This document shows, piece by piece, positions 1 through 45,195 of a stretch of 64,000 nt of DNA. A program made the translations under genes and the position numbers. The first letter of the stretch is position 1, and each line of letters opens with the position of its first letter. The stretch comes from Okamejei kenojei (Eukaryota). Location of the stretch: NCBI GenBank assembly GCA_035221665.1, contig CM069148.1, positions 21,452,001 to 21,516,000 of the forward strand, read 5' to 3'. A model generated the notes under the pieces. That model searched no databases, had not been told where the DNA came from, and saw only the letters and a list, made by a program, of their open reading frames with translations.

Positions 1-329
1 TATATAACAATATGGAGGCTGTGGCACCCATCAATTGGTCTATGTTTGAACTAATCTCAGGATGGCCTGCATTGTTCCCCCAACACTTCCCCTTCAACAT
101 TGCACCTCAACTTCAATACAGTTAGAATGGAGCTAATCTTCTGAACTATTAGAAAACAATTCACAATCTAAAGATCACTCCAACACCTGGAGACATCGTA
201 CGATGTACAGAAATTGCATATGTTTGCGCACATTGGTGGTTGCAAACCATCATAGACTCGTGAACTTAAGCATATGGGAGGATTAGCTGTACCCACACAT
301 CCACAAGGCAAAAGGTCCTCGACCAACCT

Positions 330-760
330 GTCCCCACTGCATCATAATAGCCTCCAACAATAAAAAATCATCATGAGGCTCTGGAAAAGATGGACTGCTT
401 CCTGTATCTCAGATGCCAACTCCCCGGGAAGGCAGGCATCAGTGATGAAATATCACCACCAGTTGGCCATTTTGGTCAAATGAGGAAAAGATGTTTGAAA
501 ATTACAACCTCAACATGCCACAAAACTCATGGTCTGAAGAGATCATGCCCATTCTTCTGGGTGGTCAACAGTAGACATCTCAAAGCACTGGATGAAATAT
601 CACAAACACTGCCTCTGATAAATCTTCCAAATTAATTGGAAGGATAATCAAACCAACATCACTGTTCCCCTCTGAGGCCAACATCCCCCAGCATCTAGGC
701 TGTTATATTCAGACAGCTACATTGGGCAAACAATGTCATTTGTACACCCAACATCAGACC
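330..760 (+). mobile_element. Old, degraded LINE reverse-transcriptase C-terminal remnant (RTE-like)
   Basis: Decayed reading frames resemble an RTE-type RT C-terminus (FLYL..., DEI..., FG.MRKR, QL.W...). There are many stops and indels; boundaries are approximate. Confidence 0.4.
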
Positions 761-1164
761 CCATTACTGTTAAATCTGGTTGATTTTAGATTCCAGTCCA
801 CAGCCTTAATAAGCAAGTTTGTTCAAAAACTGTTAAGTATGGATGATAATGGCTCTTAAAGATAGCGAAGTCAGGGGATATGGGGAGAAGGCAGGAACAG
901 GGTACTGATTAGGGATGATCAGCCATGATCACATTGATTGGTGGTGCTGGCTCAAAGGGCCGAATGGCCTACTCCTGCACCTATTGTCTATAGTGACGCT
1001 TAAGAGGCTTTTAGATAGGTCCATGGATGGAGAGATATGGATCATGTGCAGGCAGATGAGATTAATTTATCTTGGCATCATGTGGTGTACTGTTCATTGT
1101 TCTATATCTTGTGAATGAATAAAAAGAGATTATTGTTTTTATCCAATCTGACGGAGTGGCATAC

Positions 1165-4100
1165 CTTTTTTAAGATGTATAAATGATAAATATATAGGTA
1201 AAAAAAAGGGATGAGGTCCTACAAGGTGAATTTAGGGAGCTAGGAGATAAACTTAAAAGTAGGACCTCAAAGGTAGTAATCTCCGGATTACTACCAGTAC
1301 CACGGGCCAGTCAGAGTAGAAATAGGAGGATAATGCAAATGAATACGTGGCTTGAAAAGTGGTGCAAGGGGGAGGGATTCAAATTTTTAGGGCACTGGGA
1401 CCAGTTCTGGGGGAGGTGGGACCGGTACAAACAGGACGGTTTGCACCTGGAATGGAATGGAACCAATGTTCTTGGGGGAGTGTTTGCTAGTGCTGTCGTG
1501 GAGGATTTAAACTAATGTGGCAGGGGGATGGGTACAAGAGCAGAGAGGCAGGAGGGTGTAAAATGAGGGTAGAAGCATTAGGTAGCAAGGTGAAAGGTAA
1601 AAGTGGCAGGCAGACAAAACCAGGGCAAAAATCAAAAAGGGCCACTTTTCAGCAAAATTGTATAAGGGGTAAATGCGTTGTAAAGACAAGCCTGAAGGCT
1701 TTGTGTCTCAATGCAAGGAGTATTCGTAATAAGGTGGACGAGTTGAACGTGCAGATAGATATTAATGATTATGATATAGTTGGGATCACGGAGACATGGC
1801 TCCAGGGTGACGTAGGCTGGGAGCTGAACATCCAGGGATATTCAATATTCAGGAGGGATAGAGAGAAAGGAAAAGGAGGTGGGGTAGCGTTGCTGGTTAG
1901 AGAGGAGATTAAAGCAATGGAAAGGAAGGACATTAGCTTGGAGGATGTGGAATCGGTATGGGTAGAGCTACAAAACACTAAGGGGCAGAAAACGCTGGTA
2001 GGTGTTGTGTACAGGCCACCTAACAGTAGCAGAGAAGTTGGCGATGGTATCAAACAGGAAATTAGAAATGCGTGCGACAAAGGCAAAACAGTTATAATGG
2101 GTGACTTCAATCTACATATAGATTGGGTTAATCAAATTGGCAGGGGTGCTGAGGAAGAGGATTTTTTGGAATGTATGCGGGATAGTTATCTAAATCAACA
2201 TGTAGAGGAACCAACGAGAGAGCAGGCTATTTTAGACTGGGTTTTGAGTAATGAGGAAGGGGTAATTAGCCGTCTTGTTGTACGTGCCCCCTTGGGCAAG
2301 AGTGACCATAATATGGTTGAGTTCTTCATTAGGATGGAGAGTGACATTGTTAATTCAGAAACAATGGTTCTGAACTTAAAGAAAGGTAACTTTGAGGGTA
2401 TGAGACGTGAATTGGCCAAGATTGACTGGCAATTAATTCTAAAAGGGTTGACGGTGGATATACAATGGAAGACATTTAAAGACTGCATGGATGAACTACA
2501 AAAATTGTTCATCCCAGTTTGGCAAAAGAATAAATCGGGGAAGGTAGTGCATCCGTGGATAACAAGGGAAATCAGGGATAGTATCAAAGCAAAGGATGAT
2601 GCGTACAAAGTAGCCAGAAAAAGCAGCATACCAGAGGACTGGGAGAAATTCAGAGACCAGCAGAGGAGGACAAAGGGCTTAATTAGGAAAGGAAAAATAG
2701 ATTATGAAAGAAAACTGGCAGGGAACATAAAAACTGACTGCAAAAGTTTTTATAGATATGTGAAGAGAAAGAGGTTAGTTAAAACAAATGTAGGTCCCTT
2801 GCAGTCAGAAACGGGTGAGTTGATCATGGGGAACAAGGATATGGCGGACCAATTGAATAACTACTTTGGTTCCGTCTTCACTAAGGAAGACATAAATAAT
2901 CTACCTGAAATAGCAGGGGACTGTGGGTCAAAGGAGGAATTGAGTGAAATCCAGGTCAGTCGGGAAGTGGTGTTGGGTAAATTGAATAGATTAAAGGCCG
3001 ATAAATCCCCAGGGCCAGATAGGCTGCATCCCAGAGTACTTAAGGAAGTAGCTCAGGAAATAGTGGATGCATTAGTGATAATCTTTCAAAACTCTTTAGA
3101 TTCTGGAGTAGTTCCTGAGGATTGGCGGGTAGCAAATGTAACCCCTCTTTTTAAGAAGGGAGGGAGAGAGAAAACGGGGAATTACAGACCAGTTAGTCTA
3201 ACATCGGTAGTGGGGAAACTGCTAGAGTCAGTTATTAAAGATGGGATAGCAGCACATTTGGAAAGTGGTGAAATCATTGGACAAAGTCAGCATGGATTTA
3301 CAAAAGGTAAATCATGTCTGACGAATCTTGTGGAATTTTTCGAGGATGTAACTAGTAGCGTGGATAAGGGAGAACCAGTGGATGTGGTATATCTGGACTT
3401 CCAGAAGGCTTTCGACAAGGTCCCACATAAGAGATTAGTATACAAACTTAAAGCATACGGTATTAGGGGTTCAGTATTGATGTGGATAGAGAACTGGCTG
3501 GCAAACAGGAAGCAAAGAGTAGGAGTAAACGGGTCCTTTTCACAATGGCAGGCAGTAACTAGTGGGGTACCGCAGGGCTCAGTGCTGGGACCCCAGCTAT
3601 TTACAATATATATTAATGATCTGGATGAGGGAATTGAAGGCAATATCTCCAAGTTTGCGGATGACACTAAGCTGGGGGGCAGTGTTCGCTGTGAGGAGGA
3701 TGCTAGGAGACTGCAAGGTGACTTGGATAGGCTGGGTGAGTGGGCAAATGTTTGGCAGATGCAGTATAATGTGGATAAATGTGAGGTTATCCACTTTGGT
3801 GGCAAAAACAGGAAAGCAGACTATTATTTAAATGGTGGCCGATTAGGAAAAGGGGAGATGCAGCGAGACCTGGGTGTCATGGTACACCAGTCATTGAAAG
3901 TAGGCATGCAGGTGCAGCAGGCAGTGAAAAAAGCGAATGGTATGTTAGCTTTCATAGCAAAAGGATTTGAGTACAGGAGCAGGGAGGTTCTACTTCAGTT
4001 GTACAGGGTCTTGGTGAGACCACACCTGGAGTATTGCGTGCAGTTTTGGTCTCCAAATCTGAGGAAGGACATTATTGCCATAGAGGGAGTGCAGAGAAGG

Positions 4101-4717
4101 TTCACCAGACTGATTCCTGGGATGTCAGGACTGTCTTATGAAGAAAGACTGGATAGACTCGGTTTATACTCTCTGGAATTTAGGAGATTAAGAGGGGATC
4201 TTATAGAAACTTACAAAAATTCTTAAGGGGTTGGACAGGCTAGATGCAGGAAGATTGTTCCCGATGTTGGGGAAGTCCAGGACAAGGGGTCACAGCTTAA
4301 GGATAAGGGGGAAATCCTTTAAGACCGAGATGAGAAAGACTTTCTTCACACAGAGAGTGGTGAGTCTCTGGAACTCTCTGCCACAGAGGGTAGTTGAGGC
4401 CAGTTCATTGGCTATATTTAAGAGTGAGTTGGATGTGGCCCTTGTGGCTAAGGGGATCAGAGGGTATGGAGAGAAAGCAGGTACGGGATACTGAGTTGGA
4501 TGATCAGCCATGATCATATTGAATGGCGGTGCAGGCTCGAAGGGCTGAATGGCCTACTCCTGCACCTAATTTCTATGTTTCTATGTATAAATGATTCTAG
4601 AAATTCCTCATATGTTTGTTCATGGCTCCTGCAGAACCTTTCTAAAACATCACAGGTTATTTCTTCCTTCTCCATTGTTTGTGATCCTGACAACAATGGT
4701 ATGTCTGGTGCATTATC
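1165..4717 (-). CDS. IFTAP: IFTAP (C11orf74/NWC) first coding exon, split by a CR1 insertion: 5' part 4717..4583, 3' part 1174..1165
   Basis: The - strand acceptor is ctttccatttcag|4717 and the ATG is at 4675. Translation MEKEEITCDVLERFCRSHEQTY-EEFLESFIH matches the IFTAP N-terminus ([33 protein letters not shown]). Beyond the LINE the frame resumes as LKK-G followed by a donor gtatgc (GT at 1164-1163). Its position antisense to RAG2 is as expected for NWC. Confidence 0.85.
1188..4582 (+). mobile_element. Young 5'-truncated CR1-clade LINE with a 13-bp TSD
   Basis: It has the 3' end of ORF1 (SGNH-esterase-like, DGLHL, to 1515), ORF2, a 3' UTR and a (TTTCTATG)n tail. ATGTATAAATGAT is duplicated at 1175-1187 and 4583-4595. 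Confidence 0.95.
1515..4494 (+). CDS. CR1 ORF2 (APE endonuclease plus reverse transcriptase), one frameshift near 4215-4220
   Basis: The 903-aa ORF has NARSI, ITETWL, GDFN, SDHN (APE) and YRPVSL, GVPQGS, FADD (RT). The C-terminus continues in ORF 4231..4494 after an extra A in tacaaaaatt. Confidence 0.92.
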
Positions 4718-5534
4718 CTGAAATGGAAAGAAGTATAGTTAGAGATATAGCATTCAATAATTTCAAACAAAAAACCAAATTCATTTTAAGTAAGTGTAAG
4801 GTGAAGAGTTGAATCCATTCTCATCCCATTATTTCTAAACATTGATAATTCAGGAATTATGGAGAAACATATTTATACTAAAGTATAGAAATTAAATAAA
4901 ACTAGTGGTAAATTAAGGAAAGTATGAACAATTGATATCCCCTTATCTTTAGAGAGCATGAATGAAAAGGGAAATAATTTATGTGACTGTTGTCTGAAAG
5001 TATAGATAGAATCAGATTTAGAGTATCCAGTTAAGTTTGAGACGCTGTTTCTCAGTAAGGATATATTGAGCTATGTTGGTCTTTGGTGAGTGAAAGGGGA
5101 GAGGAAACACAATGGTGGTGCATACAGATTTACCAGAATGATATAGGGATGAAAACAGGTGGCACCACTGAAGCTTATCTTCTTTGACTAAAGATTAGAG
5201 GTGATCTAATTGATGTGCCTGAGATAAGCAAAGATGTGCTGTGTTTTCTTCTATGGGGAAAGTCCAAAACACTGGCATAACTTTACAAATAGAGATGTGG
5301 CATTAAAATGTCAATAAAAGAAGAGGGCCATACACTTTCATGGACCTGCTTCTTCAATCGATAAGACCATGGTCAAACATTTATCTCAACTTCACTTTCC
5401 CAGCTTGCCACCAAGACGCTACTAACTCTAGCTTAATTGGAACTTTCAAAGTTGAGAAAATTAGATTTAGATGTTAAATAAGGTATTACAGGTAACAGAT
5501 TGATGCCACTGAAATAAAGATAAATTTCATACCC

Positions 5535-6176
5535 GCACGGGAGACTGGTGACTAAAATTAGAGCACATGGTATTGAGGATAGGGTGTTGACATGGATAGA
5601 AAATTGGTTGGCAGACCGGAAGCAAAAGTAGGAGTGAACGGGTCCTTTTCAGAATGGCAGGCAGTGGCGAGTGGAATGCCGCAAGGCTCGGTGTTGGGGC
5701 CGCAACTGTTTACTATATATATTAATGATTTGGAATAGGGAATTAGGAACAACATTAGCAAGTTTGCGGATGACACAAAGCTGGGTGGCAGTGTTATCTG
5801 TGAAGAGGATGTTAGGAGGTTGCAGGGGGACCTGGACAGGTTGAGTGAGTGGGCAGATGCAGTATAATATTGATAAATGTGAGGTTATCCACTTTGGCGG
5901 CAAAAACAAGGGGGCAGATTATTATCTCAATGGGGTTTGGTTAGGTAAGGCGGAGGTACACCGGTCACTGAACGTTGGCTTACAGGTACAGCAGGCAGTG
6001 AAGAAAGCTAATGGAATGTTGGCCTCCTAATTTGAGGAAGGACATTCTTGTGATTGAGGCAGTGTAGCGTAGGTTCACGAGATTGATCCCTGGGATGGCA
6101 ATGAATGGCGGTGCTGGCTCGAATGGCCGAATGGCCTCCTCCTGCACCTATTTTCTACGTCTATGTTTCTATGTTT
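5535..6176 (+). mobile_element. CR1 3' fragment with internal deletions
   Basis: It has the PQGSVLGP and FADD regions and a TTTCTATG tail. Confidence 0.85.
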
Positions 6177-16137: not shown

Positions 16138-17939
16138 AGGCAAAGTCAAATGTGGGTCCCTTGAAGGCAGACATGGGTGAAATTATTATGGGCAACAAGG
16201 AATTGGCAGAAGAGTCGAATAGGTACTTCGGACCTGTCTTCACTAAGGAAGACACAAACATTCTCCGAGATGTACTGGAGGACAGAGGACCTAAGGGGGT
16301 AGAGGAACTGAAAGAAATTTTAATTAGGCGAGAAATAGTATTGGGTATGCTAATGGGACTGAAGGATGATAAATCCCCTGGGCCTGGTCTGCATCCCAGG
16401 GTATTCAGGGAGGTGGCTCTAGAAATAGTGGACGCATTAGTGATCATTTTCCAATGTTCAATAGATTCAGGATCAGTTCCTGTGGATTGGAGGATAGCTA
16501 ATGTTATCCCACTTTTCGAGAAAGGAGCGAGGGAGAAAACAGGGAATTACAGACCAGTTAGCCTGACTTCGGTGGTGGGAAAGATGCTGGAGTCAATTAT
16601 TAAAGAGGTAATAATAGGGCATTTGGATAGCAGTAAAAGGATTAGTCCGTCAACATGGATTTATGAAAGGGAAATCATGCTTGACTAATCTTCTGGAATT
16701 TTTTGAGAATGTGACAAGTAAAATGGATGAAGGGGTGCCAGTGGATGTAGTGTATCTAGACTTTCTGAAAGCCTTTGATAAGGTCCCGCACGGGAGACTG
16801 GTGACTAAAATTAGAGCACATGGTATTGGGGGTAGGGTGTTGACATGGATAGAAAATTGGTTGGCAGACCAGAAGCAAAGAGTAGGAGTGAACGGGTCCT
16901 TTTCAGAATGGCAGGCAGTGGCGAGTGGAGTGCCGCAAGGCTCGGTGCTGGGGCCGTAACTGTTTACCATATATATTAATCATTTGGAAGAGGGAATTAG
17001 GAGCAACACTAGCATGTTTGCGGATGACACAAAGCTGGGTGGCAGTGTGAACTGTGAAGAGGACGTTAGGAGGTTGCAGGGTAACCTGGACAGGTTGAGT
17101 GAGTGGGAAGATGCGTGGCAGATGCAGTATAATATAGATAAATGTGAGGTTATCCACTTTGGTGGCAAAAACAAGGGGGCAGATTATTATCTCAACGGGG
17201 TTAGGTTAGGTAAGGCGGAGGTACACCGGTCACTGAAAGTTGGCTTACAGGTACAGCAGGCAGTGAAGAAAGCTAATGGAATGTTGGCCTTCATAACAAG
17301 AGGATTTCAGTATAGAAGTAAAGAGGTTCTTCTGCAGTTGTATAGGGCTCTGGTGAGACTACATCTGGAGTATTGTGTACAGTTTTGGTCTCCTAATTTG
17401 AGGAAGGACACCCTTGTGATTGACGCAGTGCAGCGTAGGTTCACGAGATTGATCCCTGGGATGGCGGGACTGTCATATGGGGAAATATTGAAACGACTAG
17501 GTTTGTATTCACTGGAGTTTAGAAGGATGAGGGGGAATCTTATAGAAACATATAAAATTATAAAAGGACTGGACAAGCTAGATGCAGGAAAAATGTTCCC
17601 AATGTTGGGCGAGTCCAGAACTGGGGGCCACAGTCTTAGAATAAAGGGGAGGTCATTTAAGACTGAGTGAGAAAAAACATTTTCACCCAGAGAGTTGTGA
17701 ATTTATGGAATTCCCTGCCACAGAGGGCAGTGGAGGCCAAGTCACTGGATGGATTTACGAGATAGTTAGATAGTGCTCTAGGGGCTAATGGGGTCAAGGG
17801 ATATGGCGAGAAGGCAGGCACGGGTTATTGATAGGGGACGATCAGCCATGATAACAAAGAATGGCGGTGCTGGTTCAAAGGGCCGAATGGCCTTCTCCTG
17901 CACCTATTTTCTACGTTTCTATGTTTCTATGTTTCTATG
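16138..17939 (+). mobile_element. 5'-truncated CR1 LINE
   Basis: RT is spread across ORFs 16032..16688, 16663..16959 and 16984..17670, with a (TTTCTATG)n tail. Confidence 0.92.
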
Positions 17940-20067: not shown

Positions 20068-21518
20068 AGAGTCAAGAGTGTTTTATTGTCATATGTCCCA
20101 GATAGAACAATGGAATTCTTACTTGCTGCAGCACAACAGAATAAGTAAACATTGTACACTGTAAACAATATGATAAACAAGAGAAGAAAAAAAATCAGTG
20201 TGCATACTCACAAGTACGCACACAAATATATATATATATTGATACAAATACATCTATATATACACACATACACACACAATAAAGGATACTTTGACATACT
20301 CAAAAAACAAATAATAGTAGTGCAATAATAATAATAATAATAGTCTATTGTAGTTCAGAGCTTATTTGAGGTTGTAGTGTAATAGCTTAATGCCTGTAGG
20401 TAAGAAGCTGTTCCTCAACCTGGATGTTACAGTTTTCAGGCTTATGTACCCTCTTCCCGATGGCAGGGGTGAAATGAGTGTGTGGCCAGGATGGTGTGGA
20501 TCTCCGATGATGCTGGCTGCCCTTTTGAAGCAGCGACTCCGATAAATGCTTGGATGGTGGGGGGGGTCAGATCCGGTGATGGACTGGGCAGTGTTCACAA
20601 CTTTTTGCAGTCTTTTCCACTCTTGGGCATTCAAATTGCCAAACCAGGCCATGATGCAACTAATCAATATGGTCTCTACTGTACACCTGTAGAAGTTCAA
20701 GAGAATCCTCTCTGACATATCAAATCTCTGTAATCTTCTCAGGAAGTAGAGGCATTGATGTGCTTTATTTATAATTGCATCAGTGTGCTGGGTCCAGGAA
20801 AGATCTTTGGAAATATGCACGTGCAGGAATTTGAAGTTTTTGACTCCCTCCACTATTGATATGAACAGGATTGTGGGGCCATTTAGAATGGAGATGACGA
20901 AACACTTTTACACACAGAGAGTTGTGAGTCTGTGGAATTCTCTGCCTCAGAGGGCGGTGGAGGCCGGTTCTCTGGATACTTTCAAGAGAGAGCTAGATAG
21001 GGCTCTCAAAGATAGCGGAGTCAGGAGATATGGGGAGAAGGCAGGAACGGGGTACTGATTGTGGATAATCAGCCATGATCACATTTAATGGCGGTGCTGG
21101 CTTGAAGGGCCGAATGGCCTACTCCTGCACCTATTGTCTATTGTCAATTGTTTATTGTCATCCTTCCTCTTCCAAAGTCCACAATCAGTTCATTGGTTTT
21201 ACTGATATTGAGAGCCAAGTGTTATGCTGGCACCATTTGGTCAATCGGTCGATCTCACTTCTATACTCTGATAACAACAGTGGTGTCATCGGCGAACTTG
21301 AAGATGGAGATCGCACTGTGTCCGGCTATACAGTCATAGGTATAGAGTGAGTAGAGCAGGGAGCTGAACACGCAGCCTTGAGGTGCTCCCGTAATGATTG
21401 TTAATGATGAAGACGTATTTCTGCCAATTCAAACAGACTGTGGTCTGTGGATGAGGAAGTCGAGGATCCAATTGCAGAGCGATGCGCAGAAACCCAGTTC
21501 CGTGAGCTTGATAAACAG
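20068..21518 (-). mobile_element. Rex1/Babar-type LINE 3' portion, interrupted by a + strand CR1 3' end (about 20876-21156)
   Basis: ORF 20362..20853 reads FKFL...LSW...QCLYFLRRL. FKFADD lies near 21290. The nested piece has a CR1 3' end with a (CTATTGT)n tail. Confidence 0.8.
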
Positions 21519-32298: not shown

Positions 32299-33854
32299 AT
32301 GTCCCTGCAAATGGTTTCAGAGAACAGCAGTACCAACCTAATACAGCCAGGATTCTCCTTACTCAATTTTCATGGTGAAGTCTTTCTTTTTGGCCAGAAA
32401 GGGTGGCCTAAACGATCCTGCAGCTCAGGCATTTTTCTTCTTCATCTCAAGGACCATCTACTGAAACTTAAAGCAGTTTCATTTTCATCGGAATCATGCT
32501 ACCTTCCACCGCTGCGCAGGCCTGCAATAACCCATTACTCGGATCCCTCAGAAACAGGAAGCCTTTATTATATCATTCACGGTGGGAGAACTCCGAATAG
32601 TGAAGTGCCAAATTCACTTTACGTCATGAGGGTTTATGACAATACTGCCAAAAAGAGAACATCTCTTTGTTGCAGTGAAAAAAATCTAAAAGGAGATGTC
32701 CCCACAGGAAGATATGGCCACACCATCAATGTGATTCAGAACAAGGGACAAACTATATGTGTCTTGTTTGGGGGTAGATCCTACCAGCCTCCTGGGCAAA
32801 GAACCACAGAAAACTGGAACAGCTTAGTTGATTGTTTGCCTGAGGTTTTTCTGATTGATATGAACACTGGCCACTGCACATCCCACATGCTACCAGAAAT
32901 AGAAGAAGGATTTTCATTCCATGTTGCTGTTGCAAAAATTGACACCATCTATATATTAGGTGGCCACTCCATCAAAGGCAATCATCGCCCTGAAAGATTG
33001 CTTAGTCTAAAAGTAGATCTTTCAGGCATCCATCCCAGTGTTAAATGTGCAGTACTGCATGGGGGTATCTCTGTATCAAGTGCAATAGTGACCCAAGCTG
33101 GCAAAGATGAATTCATAATTGTTGGCGGCTATGAATCTGAGAGCAAGAAGCGAATCATTTGTAACACCATCGTTTTGGAGAATGATAGCATTCAGATATT
33201 GGAAAAAGATCCCCCAATGTGGACTAGTGATATAAACACAAGCAAAACCTGGTTTGGCAGCGATATGGGAAGTGGCGCAGTGTTAATAGGAATTCCTGGA
33301 AATACAAAACAGGAAACATCAGAAGCAAACTATTTCTATATAGCAAATTTTGGACAGCCAAAAGAAGAGAGCCAAATGTCTGCCAGCCAGGAATCCTTTA
33401 CTGATGCCTGAGTGACTCATCAGTGCATTGAAGATTCAGAGAGAATTTCAACTTTGTAGTGGAACCAGATCCTCTGGAAAACTTGAATGATGGAGATGAA
33501 GAAGGATAATTTGGATTAAAATGCAGTGGCAAACTGCAATATGAATAGCAAGATACTGGTGCCCTATTATTCCACATTATCTCAATAAACCAGCAATGAT
33601 CTTCTGTTCAAATGCAGATGATGATGGACACTGGGTACATGCTCAGTGCATGAATCTCACAGAATCACAGCTAATCCAGTTTTCTCAAGAGAACATAAAG
33701 TACTTTTGCAATGAACACTTTATTGATAGAGGCATTAAAACTCCACCAAAGAAAAAGCAGATAAAACGAACACCAATAAAATCCCCACGTAAGAAGTCAC
33801 CAGCAACACTGAAAAGGACAATGAAGAAAAGCTTCCTGAGACTGGTTTGATTGA
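32299..33854 (+). CDS. RAG2: Recombination activating gene 2. The core is intact; the hinge/PHD part is frameshifted in this sequence
   Basis: Acceptor tttcaaag|32274. The protein reads MSLQMV...FGQKGWPKRSC, HGGRTPN, GRYGHT, LFGGRSY and TWFGSDMG (kelch core). Downstream pieces are EDSE, LNKPAMIFCS, GHWVHAQCM (PHD), KTPP and KKSFLR. The given ORF stops at 33411. Confidence 0.95.
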
Positions 33855-36337: not shown

Positions 36338-37281
36338 AGGGGCTGTTCCACTATGCTTCGACCTAATCGCGAGTTAAGAAGAGTGTCTTTCGACCTTCAG
36401 TCAGATCGAGGGGCTCTCGACGGGGAAAAACTCCGTGATCGACCGACCCCGCATTGAAACTGCGAGCTGGATCGACTGCCCACCACCAAACAAANNNNNN
36501 NNNNNNNNNNNNNNNNNNNNNNNNNNNNNNNNNNNNNNNNNNNNNNNNNNNNNNNNNNNNNNNNNNNNNNNNNNNNNNNNNNNNNNNNNNNNNNNNNNNN
36601 NNNNNNNNNNNNNNNNNNNNNNNNNNNNNNNNNNNNNNNNNNNNNNNCAGGGAAAGCGGGGGAGTGCTGTCTGAATTTACACCGCGATAAGAGGAAGTAA
36701 GAGACGCGCACAGTGTCTGTATTATGTAATCCTACTTAGAAGAGCGTGGATGGGCGGTTAGAAGGGGAGAGGAAGGGAGAGAGAGGGGGAAGGGAATTAG
36801 AGAGAAGGGGATAGAAGGGGGAAGAGAAAAGGAGATGATTGGGGGGGGAATTGGGAGAGGGGGGAGAAAAGTAAAGTGGAGGACACTTTTAAGAATTAAA
36901 TAAAGTTAGTGGGCATTTAACCTGCGGTCAGTTTGCTTTGGTCCTGGAAACGTCAATGAGCCAATCAAAAAAAATGCACGGTCAGCGAAGGAGATTGCCT
37001 ACAGCAGCTCAGACTGCCTGTAAACTATATAGGGCGACTGCCCCAACTTCCATGCACTACAAGTTAAAAAGAACCATGCCAACCAAATTTTCAACATGCT
37101 GAAAAATTACCTGCGACCTAGCTGAGGCCACGAGTATGCTGGAACTTCCCTCGAGCTTGAAGGAGAGTTCCAGTTACCTCATAGGACCTCCTAGGACCAC
37201 GTGTTGGCCATGCTGCGAGTTTGAGTTGAGGGCAAACTCTTCTATACTCGCAGATTAGGTTGCTGCAGTGGGACAGCCCCT
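36338..37281. mobile_element. PIF/Harbinger MITE related to 14270-15032, spanning the assembly gap
   Basis: TIRs AGGGGCTGTTCCACT and AGTGGGACAGCCCCT, TAA on both sides, and a shared internal caggaaagcgggggagtgctgtctgaa. Confidence 0.8.
36495..36647. other. Assembly gap
   Basis: Run of N. Confidence 0.99.
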
Positions 37282-39714
37282 TAAGAGGAGAAGTTGGCTA
37301 TTCAGTTTATCCAGCTTTCTATAGCAATCAGTACAAGCACATCATGATTTATAAACATTTAAGACAACAGAAATATAAAATTTAGGTGACAGGAGTATGG
37401 CCATTTGGCCCTTGGCCAACGCGGGCCCCCACCGCCAATCTATGAACATGGCTGATCATCTATAAATCAGTACCCCTGCTGCTTTTTCCATATCCTTGAT
37501 TCCTTTAGCCCTAAAGCTAAATCTAACTCTCTCACTGAAAAATTAAAACATCATATATAGATGACACCATTCATAGAGATGTAACAGCACGAATGGTCCT
37601 TCAGCCCTCACATCCACACCAAACTTTTTTGACCATCTACATTAATCCTGTGTACCCAATCTGTATTTTACTAACCATTTCCTGTACTTGGTCATTTGTG
37701 TTATAAAATCATATTCTTCTACATATATTAGTATATCATGATATATCAATGCTTCTGTGGATTGAAATACCGCTTGAGTGAAGAACTTTCTTATCGCATT
37801 CCTGATTCTTTGGACCTCATATTTTTGAGTCTGTGACCTGGTCTCCCACTGACCACCATTTGGGAAACAGCCACACCTGAATCCCATCTCTCTGCCCAGT
37901 TTAATTTCAATAAGATCTTCTCTCTTTGCTACTGAATGCCAGCCTAATTAATAAAACAATCTTTTTTGTACAAACCTAGGCCATATACTGATATAGGTTT
38001 AGTGAACCTCTGTTACACTGCCGTTATGGTGAGAAGTGAGGAGTGCACTCCAAAGACATACAGGTATGTAGGTAAATTGGCTTTGTATAAATGTAAATTG
38101 TCCCTAATGTGTGTAGCATAGTGTTAATAGTGCGGGGTGGACTTGGTAGGCCGAAGGGCCTGTTTCTGCTCGGTTTCTCTAAAACTAAAACAAAAAACCA
38201 GAACTGCATGCAGTACTCCAGGTGTGTGCTCAGTAAGGTTCTGCATAATAGTAGCTAGACTCCTTGTTCCTGTACACAAAACCTCAAAGCCATTGAAAGC
38301 CAACTCACCATTTGTCTTAACTGTTTGCTACACCTGCTTATTTGCTTTCATCGGCAGGTGTACAAGATCACCCAGATTCCTTTGCACATCAACACTTATA
38401 TTGTACTCTGCCTTTATGTTTTTTCCTACCAAAGGGAATAACTTCACATTTTTCCGCAATGCCGTTGTGTTACGTTTGCTGCATTCCTGTTCGTTTGAGC
38501 AATTTCAAAATCTGTAGAATTTTGGAAAGTCATAAGTAGACAACAACAAGAAGAGGTGGTGATGTTTAGGGTTGGAATTCCAGAGCCAAGAGATTTTGAT
38601 GCAGAGGCATTACTGCAAATTAGGGTGAGATTCATATTTGGGATGTGCAAGAGCTGGGAATTGTAGGAAACAGACATCTTAAAGCATTGTAGGTCTGGAA
38701 GGTTTGAATGCAAGGATGATTTTTTTAATCGAGACATTCAATGAACACAGAGCTGATGCATTAAGGTGATTTGGTACAATTCAGGACAAAAGCAGCAAGT
38801 TTTCAAATTTACAGCAAATCAAAAATGCTAAGCTGGCCAGATGGATTGGAATAATCAGATCATAAGAGACGTATGAATAAGGCTTTCAATGGTAGGCTAA
38901 TTGAGATTAGGAACCAGGCATGTGGGCAGAAATTCCAGGAGAGAGATAGGGTCAATGGCCAAGGGTTAGAGCATATTGTAAAGACCAAACTTCAAACTAC
39001 ATGATATTTAGTGAGAAGACATTTCTGCATATATACATTCTGTTGGACAGGCTTGGGACCAGAGGTCCAACAGAAATCTTGCAAGCCAGTGAATAGGAGG
39101 CGCATGGTAAAGCATAGAAGGTCACTAGCTGATGCCATGGCATGTCTAGACCATCTTTGACATAACAACTAATCCCCAATGGAGCGAAGAACAGAGGAGA
39201 GCACAAGGACAGTGCAGTAATCAAATGCTGGAAGAACATTGAAGACTTCAACCAACATTCAGTCTTTGATGTGAATGTCCTTCCCTTCATTCTACAGAAT
39301 GTTATTTATTACAATCTCAATGTTATTGTTAACCCAACGAGAGGTTGACAAGTTGAAAAATAACTAATTATTTTCAAACGATGAAAGCCCTGCTGTGATA
39401 AAGTATCTCCAACCTGAAACATCAGCGCTGCTTCTCTTTCCATGGATGTCTCCTGGTTATTAAGTGTTTCCAGCATTTTCTGTTGTAATTTCAAGGTCAT
39501 AACAAATTCAGTAATTTGGCTGAACTACAAACTATTCTCAGAAGCATACAAAATAAAGATTCAAAAGCCAAGGTATTACTGTACACACCACACGGCACCA
39601 TCCCCAAAAGTTAGAATCAATAAAGAAATAATGTTGGAACACTGATAAAAAATTCAAACCATATCTTAAGATGAGTGATATTCAACAAATTCATCAAATC
39701 ATTGATATAGAACC

Positions 39715-41549: not shown

Positions 41550-44500
41550 CTATGAGTCTGGATTCAAATGTAGGAGGGGTGTCAAATGGGATAGTCAAGG
41601 ACGGAGTTAAAGGGAAAGAGAGTAAAGGGATAGTTAATGACCCCATAATTAATGGGAAAGAAAGTTCACAAAGGAATAGGAGAGTATGGCCAAATTTAAT
41701 AGGGATCGTTGTGAAAGGTGAAATGCATAAGGAATTAAAAGTATTGTATTTGAATGCGCAAAGTATAAGAAGTAAGGTGGATGAGCTTGAGGCTCAATTA
41801 GAGGTTGGTAGATATGACATTGTGGGGATTACTGAGACGTGGCTGCAGGAGGATCAGGCCTGGGAACTAATTCAGGGTTAAAAAATCCTATAGAAAGGAC
41901 AGCCAGGTGGGCAGAGGAGGGGGAGCTCTGCGGGTGAGGGATGAAATTCAGTCCCTTGCGAGGGAAGACATAGGGACTGATGAGGCAGAGTCACTGTGGA
42001 TTGAGTTGAGGAATTGTAAAGGCAAGAAGACACTTATTTGTGTTATATACAGCCCCCAAATAGTAGCCCGGATGTCGGGTGTAAGTAGCAGCAGGAGTTA
42101 AAACTGGCATGTAACAAAGGTAATGCCACTATGGTGATGGGGGATTTCAATACACAGGTAGACTGGGAAAATCAGGTTGTTTCATGACCCCAAGAAAGAG
42201 AATTTGTAGAGTGCCTCCGAGATGGATTTTTAGAGCAGCTTTTAATGGAGCCGACCAGAGAAAAAGTAATTCTGGATTTAACGTTGTCCAATGACCCAGA
42301 TATGATAAGAGGACTCGAGGTAAAGGAACCACTTGGAGGTAGTGATCAAAATATGATTAGTTTTAATCTGCAATTTGAGAAGGAGAAGGTTAAATCTGAA
42401 ATGTTAGTAATCCATTTGAACAAAGGGGACTATGAAGGCATGAAAGAGGAGATGGCCAACGTAGACTGGAAAGGGATCCTAGCAGGAATGACAGTGGAAC
42501 AGCAATGGCAGGAATTTCTGGGCATAATCCGGAAGACGCAGGATCCTTTCATTCCAAAAAGGAAGAAAGATTCTAAGGGGAGTAGGAGGCAATCATGGCT
42601 GACAAGAGAAGTTAGGGATAGAATAAAACTAAAAGAAAAGATGTATAACACAGCAAAGAGTAGCCGGAAGCCAGAAGGATTGGGGAAACTTTCATAGGAC
42701 AACAGAAGGAAACAAAACGGGCAATGCGGGCTGAAAAGATGAAGTACAAAGGGAAGCTGGCCAAGAATATAAAGAAGGACAGTAAAAGCTTCTTTAGATA
42801 TGTTAAGGGAAAAAGTGTAGCAAAGTCAAATGTGGATCCCTTGAAGGCAGACATGGGTGAAATTATTATGGGCAACAAGGAAATGGCAGAAGAGTTGAAC
42901 AGGTACTTCGGATCTGTCTTCACTAAGGAAGACACAAACAATCTCCCAGATGTACTGGAGGACAGAGGATCTAAGGCGGTATAGGAACTGAAATAAATTT
43001 TCATTAGGAGAGAAATAGCATTGGGTAGGCTAATGGGATTGAAGAATGATAAATCCCCTGGACCTGATGGTCTGCATCCCAGGGTCCCCAGGGAGGTGGC
43101 TCTAGAAATAGTGGTGATTATTTTTCAATGTTCGATCGATTCAGGATCAGGTCCTGTGGATTGGATGATAGCTAACATTATCCCACTTTTCAAGAAAGGA
43201 GCAAGAGATAAAACGGGGAATTACAGACCAGTTAGCCTGACTTCGGTGGTGGGAAAGATGCTGGAGTCAATTATTAAAGAGGTAATAATGGGGCATTTGG
43301 ATAGCAGTAAAAGGTTTAGTCCAAGTCAACATGGATTTATAGAAACATAGAAACATAGAAATTAGGTGCAGGAGCAGGCCATTCGGCCCTTCGAGCCTGC
43401 ATCACCATTCAATATGATCATGGCTGATCATCCAATTCAGTATCCTGTACCTGCCTTCTCTCCATACCCCCTGATCCCTTCAGCCACAAGGGCCACATCC
43501 AACTCCCTCTTAAATATGGCCAACGAACTGGCCTCAACTACCTTCTGTGGCAGAGAATTCCACAGATTCACCACTCTCTGTGTGAAAAACGATTTTCTCA
43601 TCTCGGTCCTAAAGACTTCCCCCTTATCCTTAAACTGTGACCCCTTGTCCTGGACTTCCCCAACATCGGGAACAATCTTCCTGCATCTAGCCTGTCTAAC
43701 CCCTTTAAGAATTTTGTAAGTCTCTAGGATCACCCCTCAATCTTCTAAATTCCAGCGAGTACAAGCCAAGTCTATTCAGTCTTTCTTCATATGGAAGTCG
43801 TGCCATCCCAGGAATCAGTCTGGTGAACCTTCTCTGTACTCCCTCCATGGCAAGAATGTCTTTCCTCAGATTAGGAGACCAAAACTGTATGCAATACTCC
43901 AGGTGTGGCCTCACCAAGACCCTGTACAACTGCAGTAGAACCTCCCTGCTCTTGTATTCAAATCCTTTTCCTATGAATGCCAACATACCATTCACTTTCT
44001 TCACAATACCATTTGCTTTCGTCACAGTTTCTTATGAAATGGAAATCGTGCTTGACTAATCTTCCAGAATTTTTTGAGGATGTGACAAGTAAAATGGATG
44101 AAGGGGTGCCAGTGGATGTAGTGTATCTAGACTTTCAGAAAGCCTCTGATAAGGTCCCGCACAGGAGACTGGTGACTAAAATTAGAGCACATAGTATAGG
44201 GGGTAGGGTGTTGACATGGATAGAAAATTGGTTGGCAGGACAGGAAGCAAAGAGTAGGAGTGAACGGGTCCTTTCAGAATGGCAGGGGGGGGGGGGGGGA
44301 CAGTGGCGAGTGGAGTGCCGCAAGCTCGGTGTTGGGGCCGCAACTGTTTACCATATATATTAATGATTTGGAAGAGGGAATTAGGAGCAACACTAGCAAG
44401 TTTGCGGATTACACAAAGTTGGGAGGCAGTGTAAAATGTGAAGAGGATGTTAGGAGGTTGCAGGGTGACCTGGACAGGTTGAGTGAGTGGACAGATGCAT

Positions 44501-45195
44501 GGCAGATGCAATATAATATAGATAAATGTGAGTTTATCCACTTTGGCGGCAAAAATTATTATCTCAATGGGGTTAGGTTAGGCAAGGGGGAGGTGCAGCG
44601 AGACCTGGGTGTTCTTGTACACCAGTCACTGGAAGTTGGCGTGCAGGTACAGCAGGCAGTGAAGAAAGCTAATGGAATGTTGGCTTTCATAACAAGAGGA
44701 TTTCAGTATAAAGTAAAGAGGTTCTTCTGCAGTTGTATAGGGCTCTGGTGAGACCACATCTGGAGTATTGTGTCCAGTTTTGGTCTGCGAATTTGAGGAA
44801 GGACATCCTTGTGATTGAGGCAGTGTAGTGTAGGTTCACGAGATTGATCCCTGGGATGGCGGGACTGTCATATGAGGAATGATTGAAAATACTAGGCTTG
44901 TATTCACTGGAGTTTAGAAGGATGAGGGGCTATCTTATAGAAACATATAAAATTATAAAAGGACTGGACAAGCTAGATGCAGGAAAAATGTTCTCGATGT
45001 TGGGCAACTCCAGAACCAGGGGCCACAGTCTTAGAATAAAGGAGAAGCCATTTAAGAGGGGCTAGTGGAATCAAGGGAATTGGATTGGAGACAGGCACGG
45101 GTTATTGATTGGGGGTATTCAGCCATGATCACAATGAATGGCGGTGCTGGCTCGAAGGGCCGAATGGCCTGCAATTATTTTTTATGTTTCTATGT
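41550..45195 (+). mobile_element. Frameshifted CR1 LINE (endonuclease plus RT)
   Basis: LKVLYLNAQSI, ITETWL, NYRPVSLT and FADY motifs, with a TTTCTATG tail. Confidence 0.9.
43340..44030 (-). mobile_element. CR1 3' end nested antisense inside the CR1 above
   Basis: Tail (CATAGAAA)n at about 43340. The host frame QHGF|MKWKSCL resumes at about 44033. It closely resembles 3930-4582. Confidence 0.88.

What the first reader, a model, noticed from the sequence alone, without database searches (positions are those of the whole stretch)
1165..4717. Young CR1 LINE inserted inside the first coding exon of IFTAP/NWC: a candidate natural knockout allele in the RAG locus
Seen: the - strand exon reads ...EEFLESFIH and then runs into the antisense LINE tail, reaching a stop at 4514 (53 aa from ATG 4675). 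On the far side, 3.4 kb away, the duplicated 13-mer ATGTATAAATGAT (1175-1187 = 4583-4595) is followed in frame by LKK-G|gtatgc. Removing the LINE and one TSD copy restores an exon with a proper donor. The nearest cryptic donor in the tail (attag|gtgcag) is in a different phase. Known: IFTAP/NWC is the conserved third gene of the RAG locus and is associated with ciliary IFT. Inference: this is a recent, possibly polymorphic, disrupting insertion.
Basis: partly seen in the sequence, partly recalled or inferred. Interest (0 to 1): 0.8.

Follow-up and report, generated by a model that had tools for sequence, protein, structure and literature searches.

The report
Polymorphic CR1 LINE splitting IFTAP exon
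In this assembly a 3.4-kb CR1-type jumping element splits the first coding exon of IFTAP/NWC, the gene next to RAG2, but other DNA data sets of the same species and of a related species carry the intact exon, so this is a recent, non-fixed, probably gene-breaking insertion: a tidy but ordinary kind of variant.

Summary

- **The element.** A 3,395-nt LINE lies on the + strand at 1188-4582. It has an endonuclease/reverse-transcriptase ORF2, a remnant of ORF1, a 3' hairpin and an octamer tail (ATGTTTCT). A perfect 13-nt target-site duplication flanks it (1175-1187 = 4583-4595).
- **The exon.** The LINE splits a minus-strand exon into 4717..4583 and 1174..1165. The 31 residues before the LINE match Pfam IFTAP above its curated cut-off. 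RAG2 and RAG1 lie beside it in the expected order.
- **New evidence.** Public contigs join 1174 directly to 4583, which is the empty site. They come from two samples of the same species (two studies) and from a related species about 2.8% diverged. The insertion is therefore derived, young and not fixed. It is most likely heterozygous in, or private to, the assembled haplotype.
- **Consequence (inferred).** The filled allele stops after 53 codons and its native donor lies 3.4 kb away, so loss of function is likely. A weak GT at 4558 keeps the native phase, so a leaky in-frame product is not excluded.
- **Weight.** Mouse NWC knockouts have only a subtle sperm phenotype. I rate this a new member of a known kind, of modest interest.

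The parts
4583..4717 (-). IFTAP/NWC first coding exon, 5' part (135 nt). Acceptor AG at 4719-4718, ATG at 4675, 31 native codons up to ...ESFIH.
   Evidence: Searches give the sequence and frame. Pfam IFTAP PF17722 matches at E 2.6e-9, 37.8 bits against a cut-off of 29.3.
1165..1174 (-). IFTAP exon, 3' part (CTT AAA AAA G = L K K plus the first base of a split codon). It is followed by the native donor G|GTATGC (intron starts at 1164), phase 1.
   Evidence: frame arithmetic, and a donor score of 8.0 on a simple weight matrix. table 8: contigs join 1174 to 4583.
1175..1187 (.). Target-site duplication, copy at the LINE 5' end (ATGTATAAATGAT on the + strand).
   Evidence: family D4, 100% identity.
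4583..4595 (.). Target-site duplication, copy at the LINE 3' end. Its first 4 nt (ATGT) equal the start of the next octamer unit of the LINE tail (microhomology).
1188..4582 (+). CR1-type LINE insertion, 3,395 nt, antisense to IFTAP and 5'-truncated inside ORF1.
   Evidence: It is absent from the empty-site contigs of X1, X5 and X6.
1198..1515 (+). C-terminal remnant of LINE ORF1 (about 105 codons open up to the stop that overlaps the ORF2 ATG).
   Evidence: translation. It has no Pfam hit, so the esterase-like reading rests on recall only.
1515..4226 (+). LINE ORF2, 903 codons, with endonuclease and reverse-transcriptase domains.
   Evidence: Pfam Exo_endo_phos E 3.3e-12 and RVT_1 E 1.5e-33.
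4231..4494 (+). C-terminal part of ORF2, read in a different frame (87 codons). The frame is broken around 4215-4230.
   Evidence: In one search table 4, family copies are split between two lengths at 4215.
4528..4566 (+). 3' hairpin of the LINE (GGTGCAGG 4528-4535 pairs with CCTGCACC 4559-4566).
   Evidence: MFE -28.7 kcal/mol for 4495-4582, z -2.5; the stem is conserved in 7 copies, with no covariation.
4567..4582 (+). LINE 3' terminus with no poly(A): TAATTTCTATGTTTCT, one and a half units of the family's octamer microsatellite (ATGTTTCT)n.
   Evidence: One search shows the tails of other copies at 17880-17935, 43330-43370 (reverse) and 6150-6175. table 7 gives the loose-end consensus.
4514..4516 (-). 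Premature stop codon of the filled allele, 53 codons after ATG 4675 (31 native plus 22 LINE-antisense codons).
4550..4568 (-). Two weak cryptic donors in the antisense LINE tail. TAG|GTGCAG has its last exon base at 4566 (phase 2, score 2.7). GGA|GTAGGC has its last exon base at 4558 (phase 1, the native phase, score 1.9).

Best explanation
A CR1-type LINE, 5'-truncated and therefore non-autonomous, retrotransposed in antisense orientation into the first coding exon of IFTAP/NWC, the gene head-to-head with RAG2.

**How it inserted.** The features fit target-primed reverse transcription. The insertion duplicated 13 nt of the target. The first 4 nt of that target match the element's octamer tail.

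**When.** It happened after this species (organism A) split from a close relative (organism B), and it has not reached fixation. The intact exon is present in two other DNA samples of organism A. The assembled haplotype therefore carries a segregating or private insertion allele. If run X1 comes from the assembled individual, that animal is most likely heterozygous.

**What it does (inferred).** The allele most likely inactivates IFTAP. The reading frame stops after 31 native plus 22 foreign residues. The last 10 nt of the exon and its donor are displaced by 3.4 kb. No strong donor lies before the stop.

**Shown:** the anatomy, the gene identity, the element type and the existence of the empty allele.
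**Inferred:** heterozygosity of the reference animal, and loss of function.
For: - **Duplication and boundary.** The 13/13 duplication sits exactly at the LINE boundaries. Four other copies in the window independently fix the 3' boundary.
- **Empty site in organism A.** Contig X1 record 2 is 1,099 nt; window 1054-1174 maps to contig 1-121 and window 4583-5560 to contig 122-1099, with one mismatch. X5 record 17 has the same structure with 6 mismatches and comes from a different sample and study (table 8).
- **Empty site in organism B.** X6 record 24 has the same joint. Its flanks carry about 2.8% mismatches plus indels.
- **A distinct haplotype.** At 4775 the window has C, while X1, X5 and X6 all have A (table 3).
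- **Gene identity.** Pfam IFTAP matches above its curated cut-off. RAG2 (+ strand) and RAG1 (- strand) are alongside.
- **Element type.** EN and RT domains, a hairpin and octamer tail, and an ORF1 remnant open from 1198.
- **A young family.** In X1, 39,460 of the 235,816 laid contigs are at least 99% alike (table 1).
- **Truncation.** The stop is at 4516-4514. The native donor scores 8.0, against at most 2.7 for any GT before the stop.
Against: - The filled junctions (1187|1188 and 4582|4583) were not seen in any run.
- The assembly has local indel problems elsewhere in the window: the RAG2 C-terminal region is spread over three frames. At 1200, 96% of the family depth in X1 has one base fewer than the LINE copy here; at 4215, 39% does (table 4). 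Its quality is therefore not beyond doubt.
- Loss of function is not demonstrated. A weak phase-1 GT at 4558 could give an in-frame product. The exon has no in-frame stop upstream of the ATG, so the true start could lie in an earlier exon. The remaining IFTAP exons are outside the window.
Confidence: 0.78

Rival explanations
1. Assembly artefact: the LINE was placed in the exon by a chimeric read, a wrong patch or a mis-join, and no animal carries the filled allele.
For: - Only empty-site contigs were seen, in X1 (possibly the source sample), X5 and X6.
- The same window has a patch of at least 5 single-base frame changes in RAG2.
- The LINE shows homopolymer-length oddities at 1200 and 4215 (table 4).
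Against: - A mis-join does not create a perfect 13-nt duplication of the target exactly at the canonical 3' end of the element.
- A mis-join does not explain the 4-nt microhomology between the target and the octamer tail.
- The flanks match X1 without indels, with 1 mismatch in 1,099 nt.
- The private C at 4775 suggests a real, distinct haplotype.
- Logan contigs drop minor paths into repeats, so the absence of filled junctions from the listing proves nothing.
Confidence: 0.07
2. The insertion is real but does not knock the gene out. The filled allele still yields a usable protein, either through the weak phase-1 cryptic donor at 4558 (31 native residues, 8 foreign residues, then the next exon in frame) or through exon skipping with a downstream start.
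For: - GGA|GTAGGC at 4558 is in phase 1, like the native donor, and lies before the stop.
- No AATAAA or ATTAAA signal lies on the minus strand inside the LINE, so transcription is not obviously terminated there.
- An earlier first-stage note on this genome (s1-880086, unchecked) describes an exon rescued by an antisense CR1 splice site.
Against: - The site scores 1.9, against 8.0 for the native donor, and lacks G at position -1.
- A slightly better GT 8 nt upstream (4566, score 2.7) is out of phase.
- The product would replace part of the conserved N-terminal block that Pfam aligns.
- No RNA junction data were available.
Confidence: 0.12
3. The empty-site contigs come from a second, paralogous copy of the locus rather than from an allele, and the filled site is fixed.
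For: No positive evidence. It is considered only because contigs carry no positional information.
Against: - The contigs are 99.9% (X1) and 99.4% (X5) identical to the flanks over about 1.1 kb of intron and exon.
- Their depth equals that of neighbouring single-copy contigs: 10.6 against 7.6 in X1, and 25.6 against 24.9 in X5.
- The related species also has only the empty form.
Confidence: 0.03

Closest known systems
De novo and polymorphic LINE-1 insertions into coding exons of mammals (classic case: L1 in exon 14 of the human factor VIII gene; from my own knowledge, not checked here)
   Same: A 5'-truncated LINE copy, flanked by a target-site duplication, sits inside a coding exon. An intact empty-site allele exists in the population. 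The expected result is loss of function.
   Different: The element here is CR1-type: it has no poly(A) tail, it ends in an octamer microsatellite behind a hairpin, and it primes on microhomology. The host is a non-mammalian vertebrate that first-stage notes call a cartilaginous fish. No phenotype is known.
Amniote CR1 retrotransposons (PMC8665684; PMC4316615)
   Same: ORF2 carries EN and RT. The 3' end has a hairpin directly followed by an 8-nt microsatellite. The unit TTTCTATG here differs at one position from one reading (ATTCTATG) of the avian unit ATTCTRTG. Copy depth rises steeply towards the 3' end (table 2), the pattern that frequent 5' truncation would give.
   Different: This copy has a clear 13-nt target-site duplication. 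Its family is highly abundant and has many near-identical copies in this genome. The RT was not placed on a tree, so clade membership is structural only.
Engineered NWC (Iftap) knockout mice (PMC4939155, PMC6283527)
   Same: Loss of the same conserved third gene of the RAG locus.
   Different: The mouse alleles are engineered and were studied as homozygotes, with no gross phenotype and reduced sperm competitiveness. This one is a natural insertion allele of unknown frequency and zygosity, and its effect on the mRNA is untested.

Membership tests
IFTAP / NWC (Pfam PF17722) | Sequence match to the family profile above the curated threshold | tested here: met
   the 31 residues from 4675 to 4583 score 37.8 bits (cut-off 29.3, E 2.6e-9) on profile positions 11-41 of 234. 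The 60-residue ORF scores 43.2 bits.
IFTAP / NWC (Pfam PF17722) | Position in the RAG locus: next to RAG2 on the opposite strand, with RAG2 and RAG1 convergent | tested here: met
   RAG2 is on the + strand from 32299 and RAG1 on the - strand at 51439-48341. The exon is on the - strand at 4717, on the far side of RAG2 from RAG1.
IFTAP / NWC (Pfam PF17722) | Full protein with the three conserved domains | not testable with these tools
   No further IFTAP-like piece lies in 1-1164. The rest of the gene is beyond the window start.
CR1-clade LINE | One ORF with APE-type endonuclease and reverse transcriptase | tested here: met
   Exo_endo_phos (E 3.3e-12) and RVT_1 (E 1.5e-33) lie in the 903-codon ORF at 1515-4226. 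The C-terminal 87 codons are in another frame.
CR1-clade LINE | 3' end with a hairpin followed by a short (typically 8-nt) microsatellite and no poly(A) (definition as in PMC8665684) | tested here: met
   The hairpin is at 4528-4566. The tail (ATGTTTCT)n is seen in the focal copy and in at least 3 other copies.
CR1-clade LINE | Reverse transcriptase groups with CR1 on a tree of LINE clades | not tested
   No reference RT set was fetched. The likeness of the ORF2 C-terminus to chicken CR1 is recalled from memory only.
Segregating retrotransposon insertion (filled and empty allele pair) | Target-site duplication whose single copy is found at an intact empty site in the same species | tested here: met
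   One search shows the duplication. table 8 shows empty-site contigs in X1 and X5 (organism A, two samples, two studies) and in X6 (organism B).
Segregating retrotransposon insertion (filled and empty allele pair) | Filled junctions supported by reads independent of the assembly | tested here: inconclusive
   The listing is dominated by repeat contigs and shows none at 1187|1188 or 4582|4583.

The most novel reading that the evidence does not exclude
The insertion allele segregates at appreciable frequency, so homozygous natural IFTAP-null animals exist in a vertebrate that first-stage notes call a cartilaginous fish. Its CR1 family would also still be retrotransposing in the germ line. That would give a natural test of what the conserved third gene of the RAG locus does, and whether its transcription matters for RAG2 control. 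It would also give a living example of current CR1 mobility outside amniotes.
Probability: 0.12. Interest if true: 0.55.

Novelty: new member of a known kind. Interest (0 to 1): 0.33.

Why it matters
- **For annotation.** Gene models built on this assembly will show IFTAP as broken or will mis-splice it, although the species has an intact allele.
- **For transposon biology.** A filled/empty pair with a perfect duplication and tail microhomology is direct evidence of very recent CR1-type retrotransposition in this lineage. It also shows the insertion mechanism at base resolution.
- **For the RAG locus.** It offers a possible natural loss-of-function allele of NWC/IFTAP. Mouse knockouts show only reduced sperm competitiveness, so a heterozygous carrier is unlikely to be harmed, and the variant itself is not surprising.

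Tried and rejected
- **Exact look-up found nothing.** RAG1, RAG2 and LINE ORF2 are not in the protein collection, so the species stays coded as 'organism A'.
- **No solved structure matches the exon** (E up to 10).
- **No further IFTAP exon lies in 1-1164**.
- **Two LINE pieces have no Pfam hit:** the ORF1 remnant and the ORF2 C-terminal piece.
- **The hairpin shows no covariation**, so it is conserved in sequence only.
- The Pfam scan had already settled the exon's identity.
- **The two exon pieces were not joined for any search.** Their continuity was shown by translating each piece separately and by coordinate arithmetic, and physically by the empty-site contigs.
- **Run X15 is only a hint.** Among the single-copy bins it has depth (38) only in 4601-4800, which holds the exon, and none in the seven intronic bins. 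This suggests RNA in which the exon is expressed. The tool labels the run 'probably DNA' and does not list the contig, so I treat this as a hint and not as evidence.
- **Fixed insertion rejected**, because empty sites exist in two conspecific samples.
- **Old insertion rejected**, because it is absent from the related species and the duplication is perfect.
Full report
**What is in the sequence**

On the minus strand, an acceptor (AG at 4719-4718) opens an exon at 4717. The ATG at 4675 starts MEKEEITCDVLERFCRSHEQTYEEFLESFIH, which ends at 4583. The frame then runs into foreign sequence and stops at 4516-4514, 53 codons from the ATG.

The 13-mer ATGTATAAATGAT (+ strand) occurs at 4583-4595 and again at 1175-1187, with perfect identity. 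Behind the second copy the same codon phase continues with CTT AAA AAA G, followed by GTATGC. That is a good donor (score 8.0 on a simple weight matrix), in phase 1, with the last exon base at 1165. Each was translated on its own, and the continuity follows from the shared phase of the duplicated 13-mer.

**What the insert is**

- Positions 1188-4582 on the + strand carry a 903-codon ORF (1515-4226) with an APE-type endonuclease and a reverse transcriptase.
- Upstream lies about 105 open codons of an ORF1 C-terminus, whose stop overlaps the ORF2 ATG. The copy is therefore 5'-truncated inside ORF1 and cannot be autonomous.
- The last 87 codons of ORF2 are in another frame (4231-4494). The break lies around 4215-4230. 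At 4215, about 39% of the family depth in run X1 has one base fewer than this copy (table 4). The break may be a real change or a homopolymer-length error.
- The 3' end has a hairpin (GGTGCAGG 4528-4535 with CCTGCACC 4559-4566; MFE -28.7 kcal/mol for 4495-4582, z -2.5). The stem is conserved in seven copies in the window, without covariation.
- Behind the hairpin comes an octamer microsatellite (ATGTTTCT)n and no poly(A).
- A hairpin plus an 8-nt microsatellite is the 3' structure used to define retrotransposition-competent CR1 elements. The avian unit is ATTCTRTG (PMC8665684). The unit here, read as TTTCTATG, differs at one position from one reading of it.
- Four other copies in the window end at the same base as the focal copy, so the 3' boundary does not depend on the duplication.
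- The first four bases of the duplicated target (ATGT) equal the start of the next octamer unit. This is the microhomology expected if the nicked target primes on the tail.
- I did not place the RT on a tree, so the CR1 assignment is structural.

**What the exon is**

The 31 native residues match Pfam IFTAP (PF17722) at 37.8 bits, above the curated cut-off of 29.3 (E 2.6e-9), on profile positions 11-41 of 234. RAG2 lies on the + strand from 32299. RAG1 lies on the - strand at 51439-48341. The exon therefore sits where NWC/IFTAP is expected, on the strand opposite RAG2.

No in-frame stop separates the acceptor from the ATG, so 'first coding exon' is probable but not proven. No further IFTAP-like piece lies in 1-1164, so the rest of the gene is off the window.

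**The new evidence: empty sites**

I laid Logan contigs of four public runs on 1-6000.

| Run | Organism, sample | Contig | Window to contig mapping | Differences |
|---|---|---|---|---|
| X1 | A, S1 | 1,099 nt | 1054-1174 to 1-121; 4583-5560 to 122-1099 | 1 mismatch, nothing between the two parts |
| X5 | A, S2 (another study) | 1,099 nt | same structure | 6 mismatches |
| X6 | B | 413 nt | same joint | flanks about 2.8% diverged, with several indels |

These contigs have far more than 31 letters on each side of the joint.

The insertion is therefore derived, younger than the split of organisms A and B, and not fixed in A. At 4775 the window has C, whereas X1, X5 and X6 all have A (table 3). 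This suggests that the assembled haplotype is a distinct one.

X1 differs from the window at only 2 of about 1,980 flank positions, against 9 for X5. It may therefore be the source animal, in which case that animal is heterozygous. This is inference.

The family looks recently active. In X1, 39,460 of the 235,816 laid contigs are at least 99% alike. Depth rises about 20-fold from the 5' to the 3' end of the element (tables 1, 2).

**What I could not show**

The listing keeps only the longest contigs and is swamped by repeat copies. It shows no contig across 1187|1188 or 4582|4583. Contigs also drop minor paths into repeats.

An artefact nevertheless seems unlikely (about 7%). A mis-join does not make a perfect duplication at the canonical end of an element, with tail microhomology.

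Run X15 has depth (38) in only one single-copy bin, 4601-4800, which holds the exon. It has no depth in the seven intronic bins. This looks like RNA in which the exon is expressed. The tool calls the run 'probably DNA' and does not list the contig, so this stays a hint.

**Consequence for the gene (inferred)**

In the filled allele the protein would stop after 31 native and 22 foreign residues. The native donor is 3.4 kb from the acceptor.

Only two weak GTs lie after the insertion point and before the stop (two more weak GTs lie within the native coding sequence):

- TAG|GTGCAG at 4566 (score 2.7, phase 2).
- GGA|GTAGGC at 4558 (score 1.9, phase 1).

The only strong donor in the antisense LINE (4026) lies behind the stop. 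There is no AATAAA or ATTAAA on that strand.

Loss of function by truncation, a frame shift or exon skipping is the likely outcome. A low level of an in-frame product through 4558 cannot be excluded.

Engineered NWC-null mice show no gross abnormality (PMC4939155) and only reduced sperm competitiveness (PMC6283527). A carrier, especially a heterozygote, need not be harmed.

**Comparison and verdict**

This is the familiar class of a segregating LINE insertion that breaks an exon, here with a CR1-type element and in the third gene of the RAG locus. It is a new member of a known kind.

Two corrections apply: the element is truncated and frame-broken, and an in-phase cryptic donor exists. I lower the interest from 0.8 to about 0.33.

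- The anatomy is unusually clean, and the polymorphism is now documented.
- A heterozygous or low-frequency disrupting insertion in one reference genome is expected biology.
- The knocked-out gene has a mild null phenotype in mice.

- The exact protein look-up found nothing, so the species remains coded.
- That it is a cartilaginous fish comes from first-stage notes and was not tested.

Noticed in passing
window 33405-33590 (RAG2, + strand): The RAG2 ORF stops at TGA 33409-33411, after the core (about 370 residues, aligned to mouse RAG2 1-353). The acidic hinge and the start of the PHD finger are still recognisable, but they are spread over all three frames with at least 5 single-base frame changes in about 180 nt. 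The next 263 nt (...LNKPAMIFCS...HWVHAQC... to the stop at 33848-33850) match zebrafish and mouse RAG2 residues about 430-529 (E 5e-24). RAG1 and the RAG2 core are clean. Residue similarity is preserved, so this looks like a locally unpolished patch of the assembly and not gene decay. It was not checked with reads.
   Followed up: partly
window 871-991 (+ strand), extending as repeat to about 1053: An older 3' tail fragment of the same LINE family (or of a SINE that shares the tail) lies in the IFTAP intron 180 nt from the exon's donor. It is 85-90% identical to 4458-4576 and ends in a TTGTCTAT-type tail. In every run this tail reaches a contig depth comparable to or above that of the LINE's own 3'-end bin (4401-4600), and about 20-fold above the LINE's 5' part (table 2).
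   Followed up: partly
window 1200 and 4215: In both places the focal LINE copy is one base longer than many family copies: an A-run of 8 at 1200-1207 and an A-run of 5 at 4215-4219. At 1200, 96% of the family depth in X1 has one base fewer; at 4215, 39% does (table 4). These may be homopolymer-length errors of the assembly or private changes of this copy.
   Followed up: no
window 4717 and 4775: There are single-base differences between samples next to the exon. X5 has T for C at 4717, the first exon base (G>A on the coding strand, in the 5' untranslated part). The window alone has C at 4775, where X1, X5 and X6 have A (table 3).
   Followed up: no
window 4711-4713 (- strand): An out-of-frame ATG lies 38 nt upstream of the IFTAP start and opens an upstream reading frame of 18 codons before its stop within the same exon.
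   Followed up: no
window 5554-6160, 16147-17920, 20891-21141, 37369-38458, 42596-45191: Further copies and fragments of the same LINE family are 68-91% identical to the focal copy. They include a nested or inverted pair at 43349-44004 (reverse, 90.6%) inside 42596-45191.
   Followed up: no
window 36495-36647: A run of 153 N lies about 2.6 kb downstream of RAG2.
   Followed up: no
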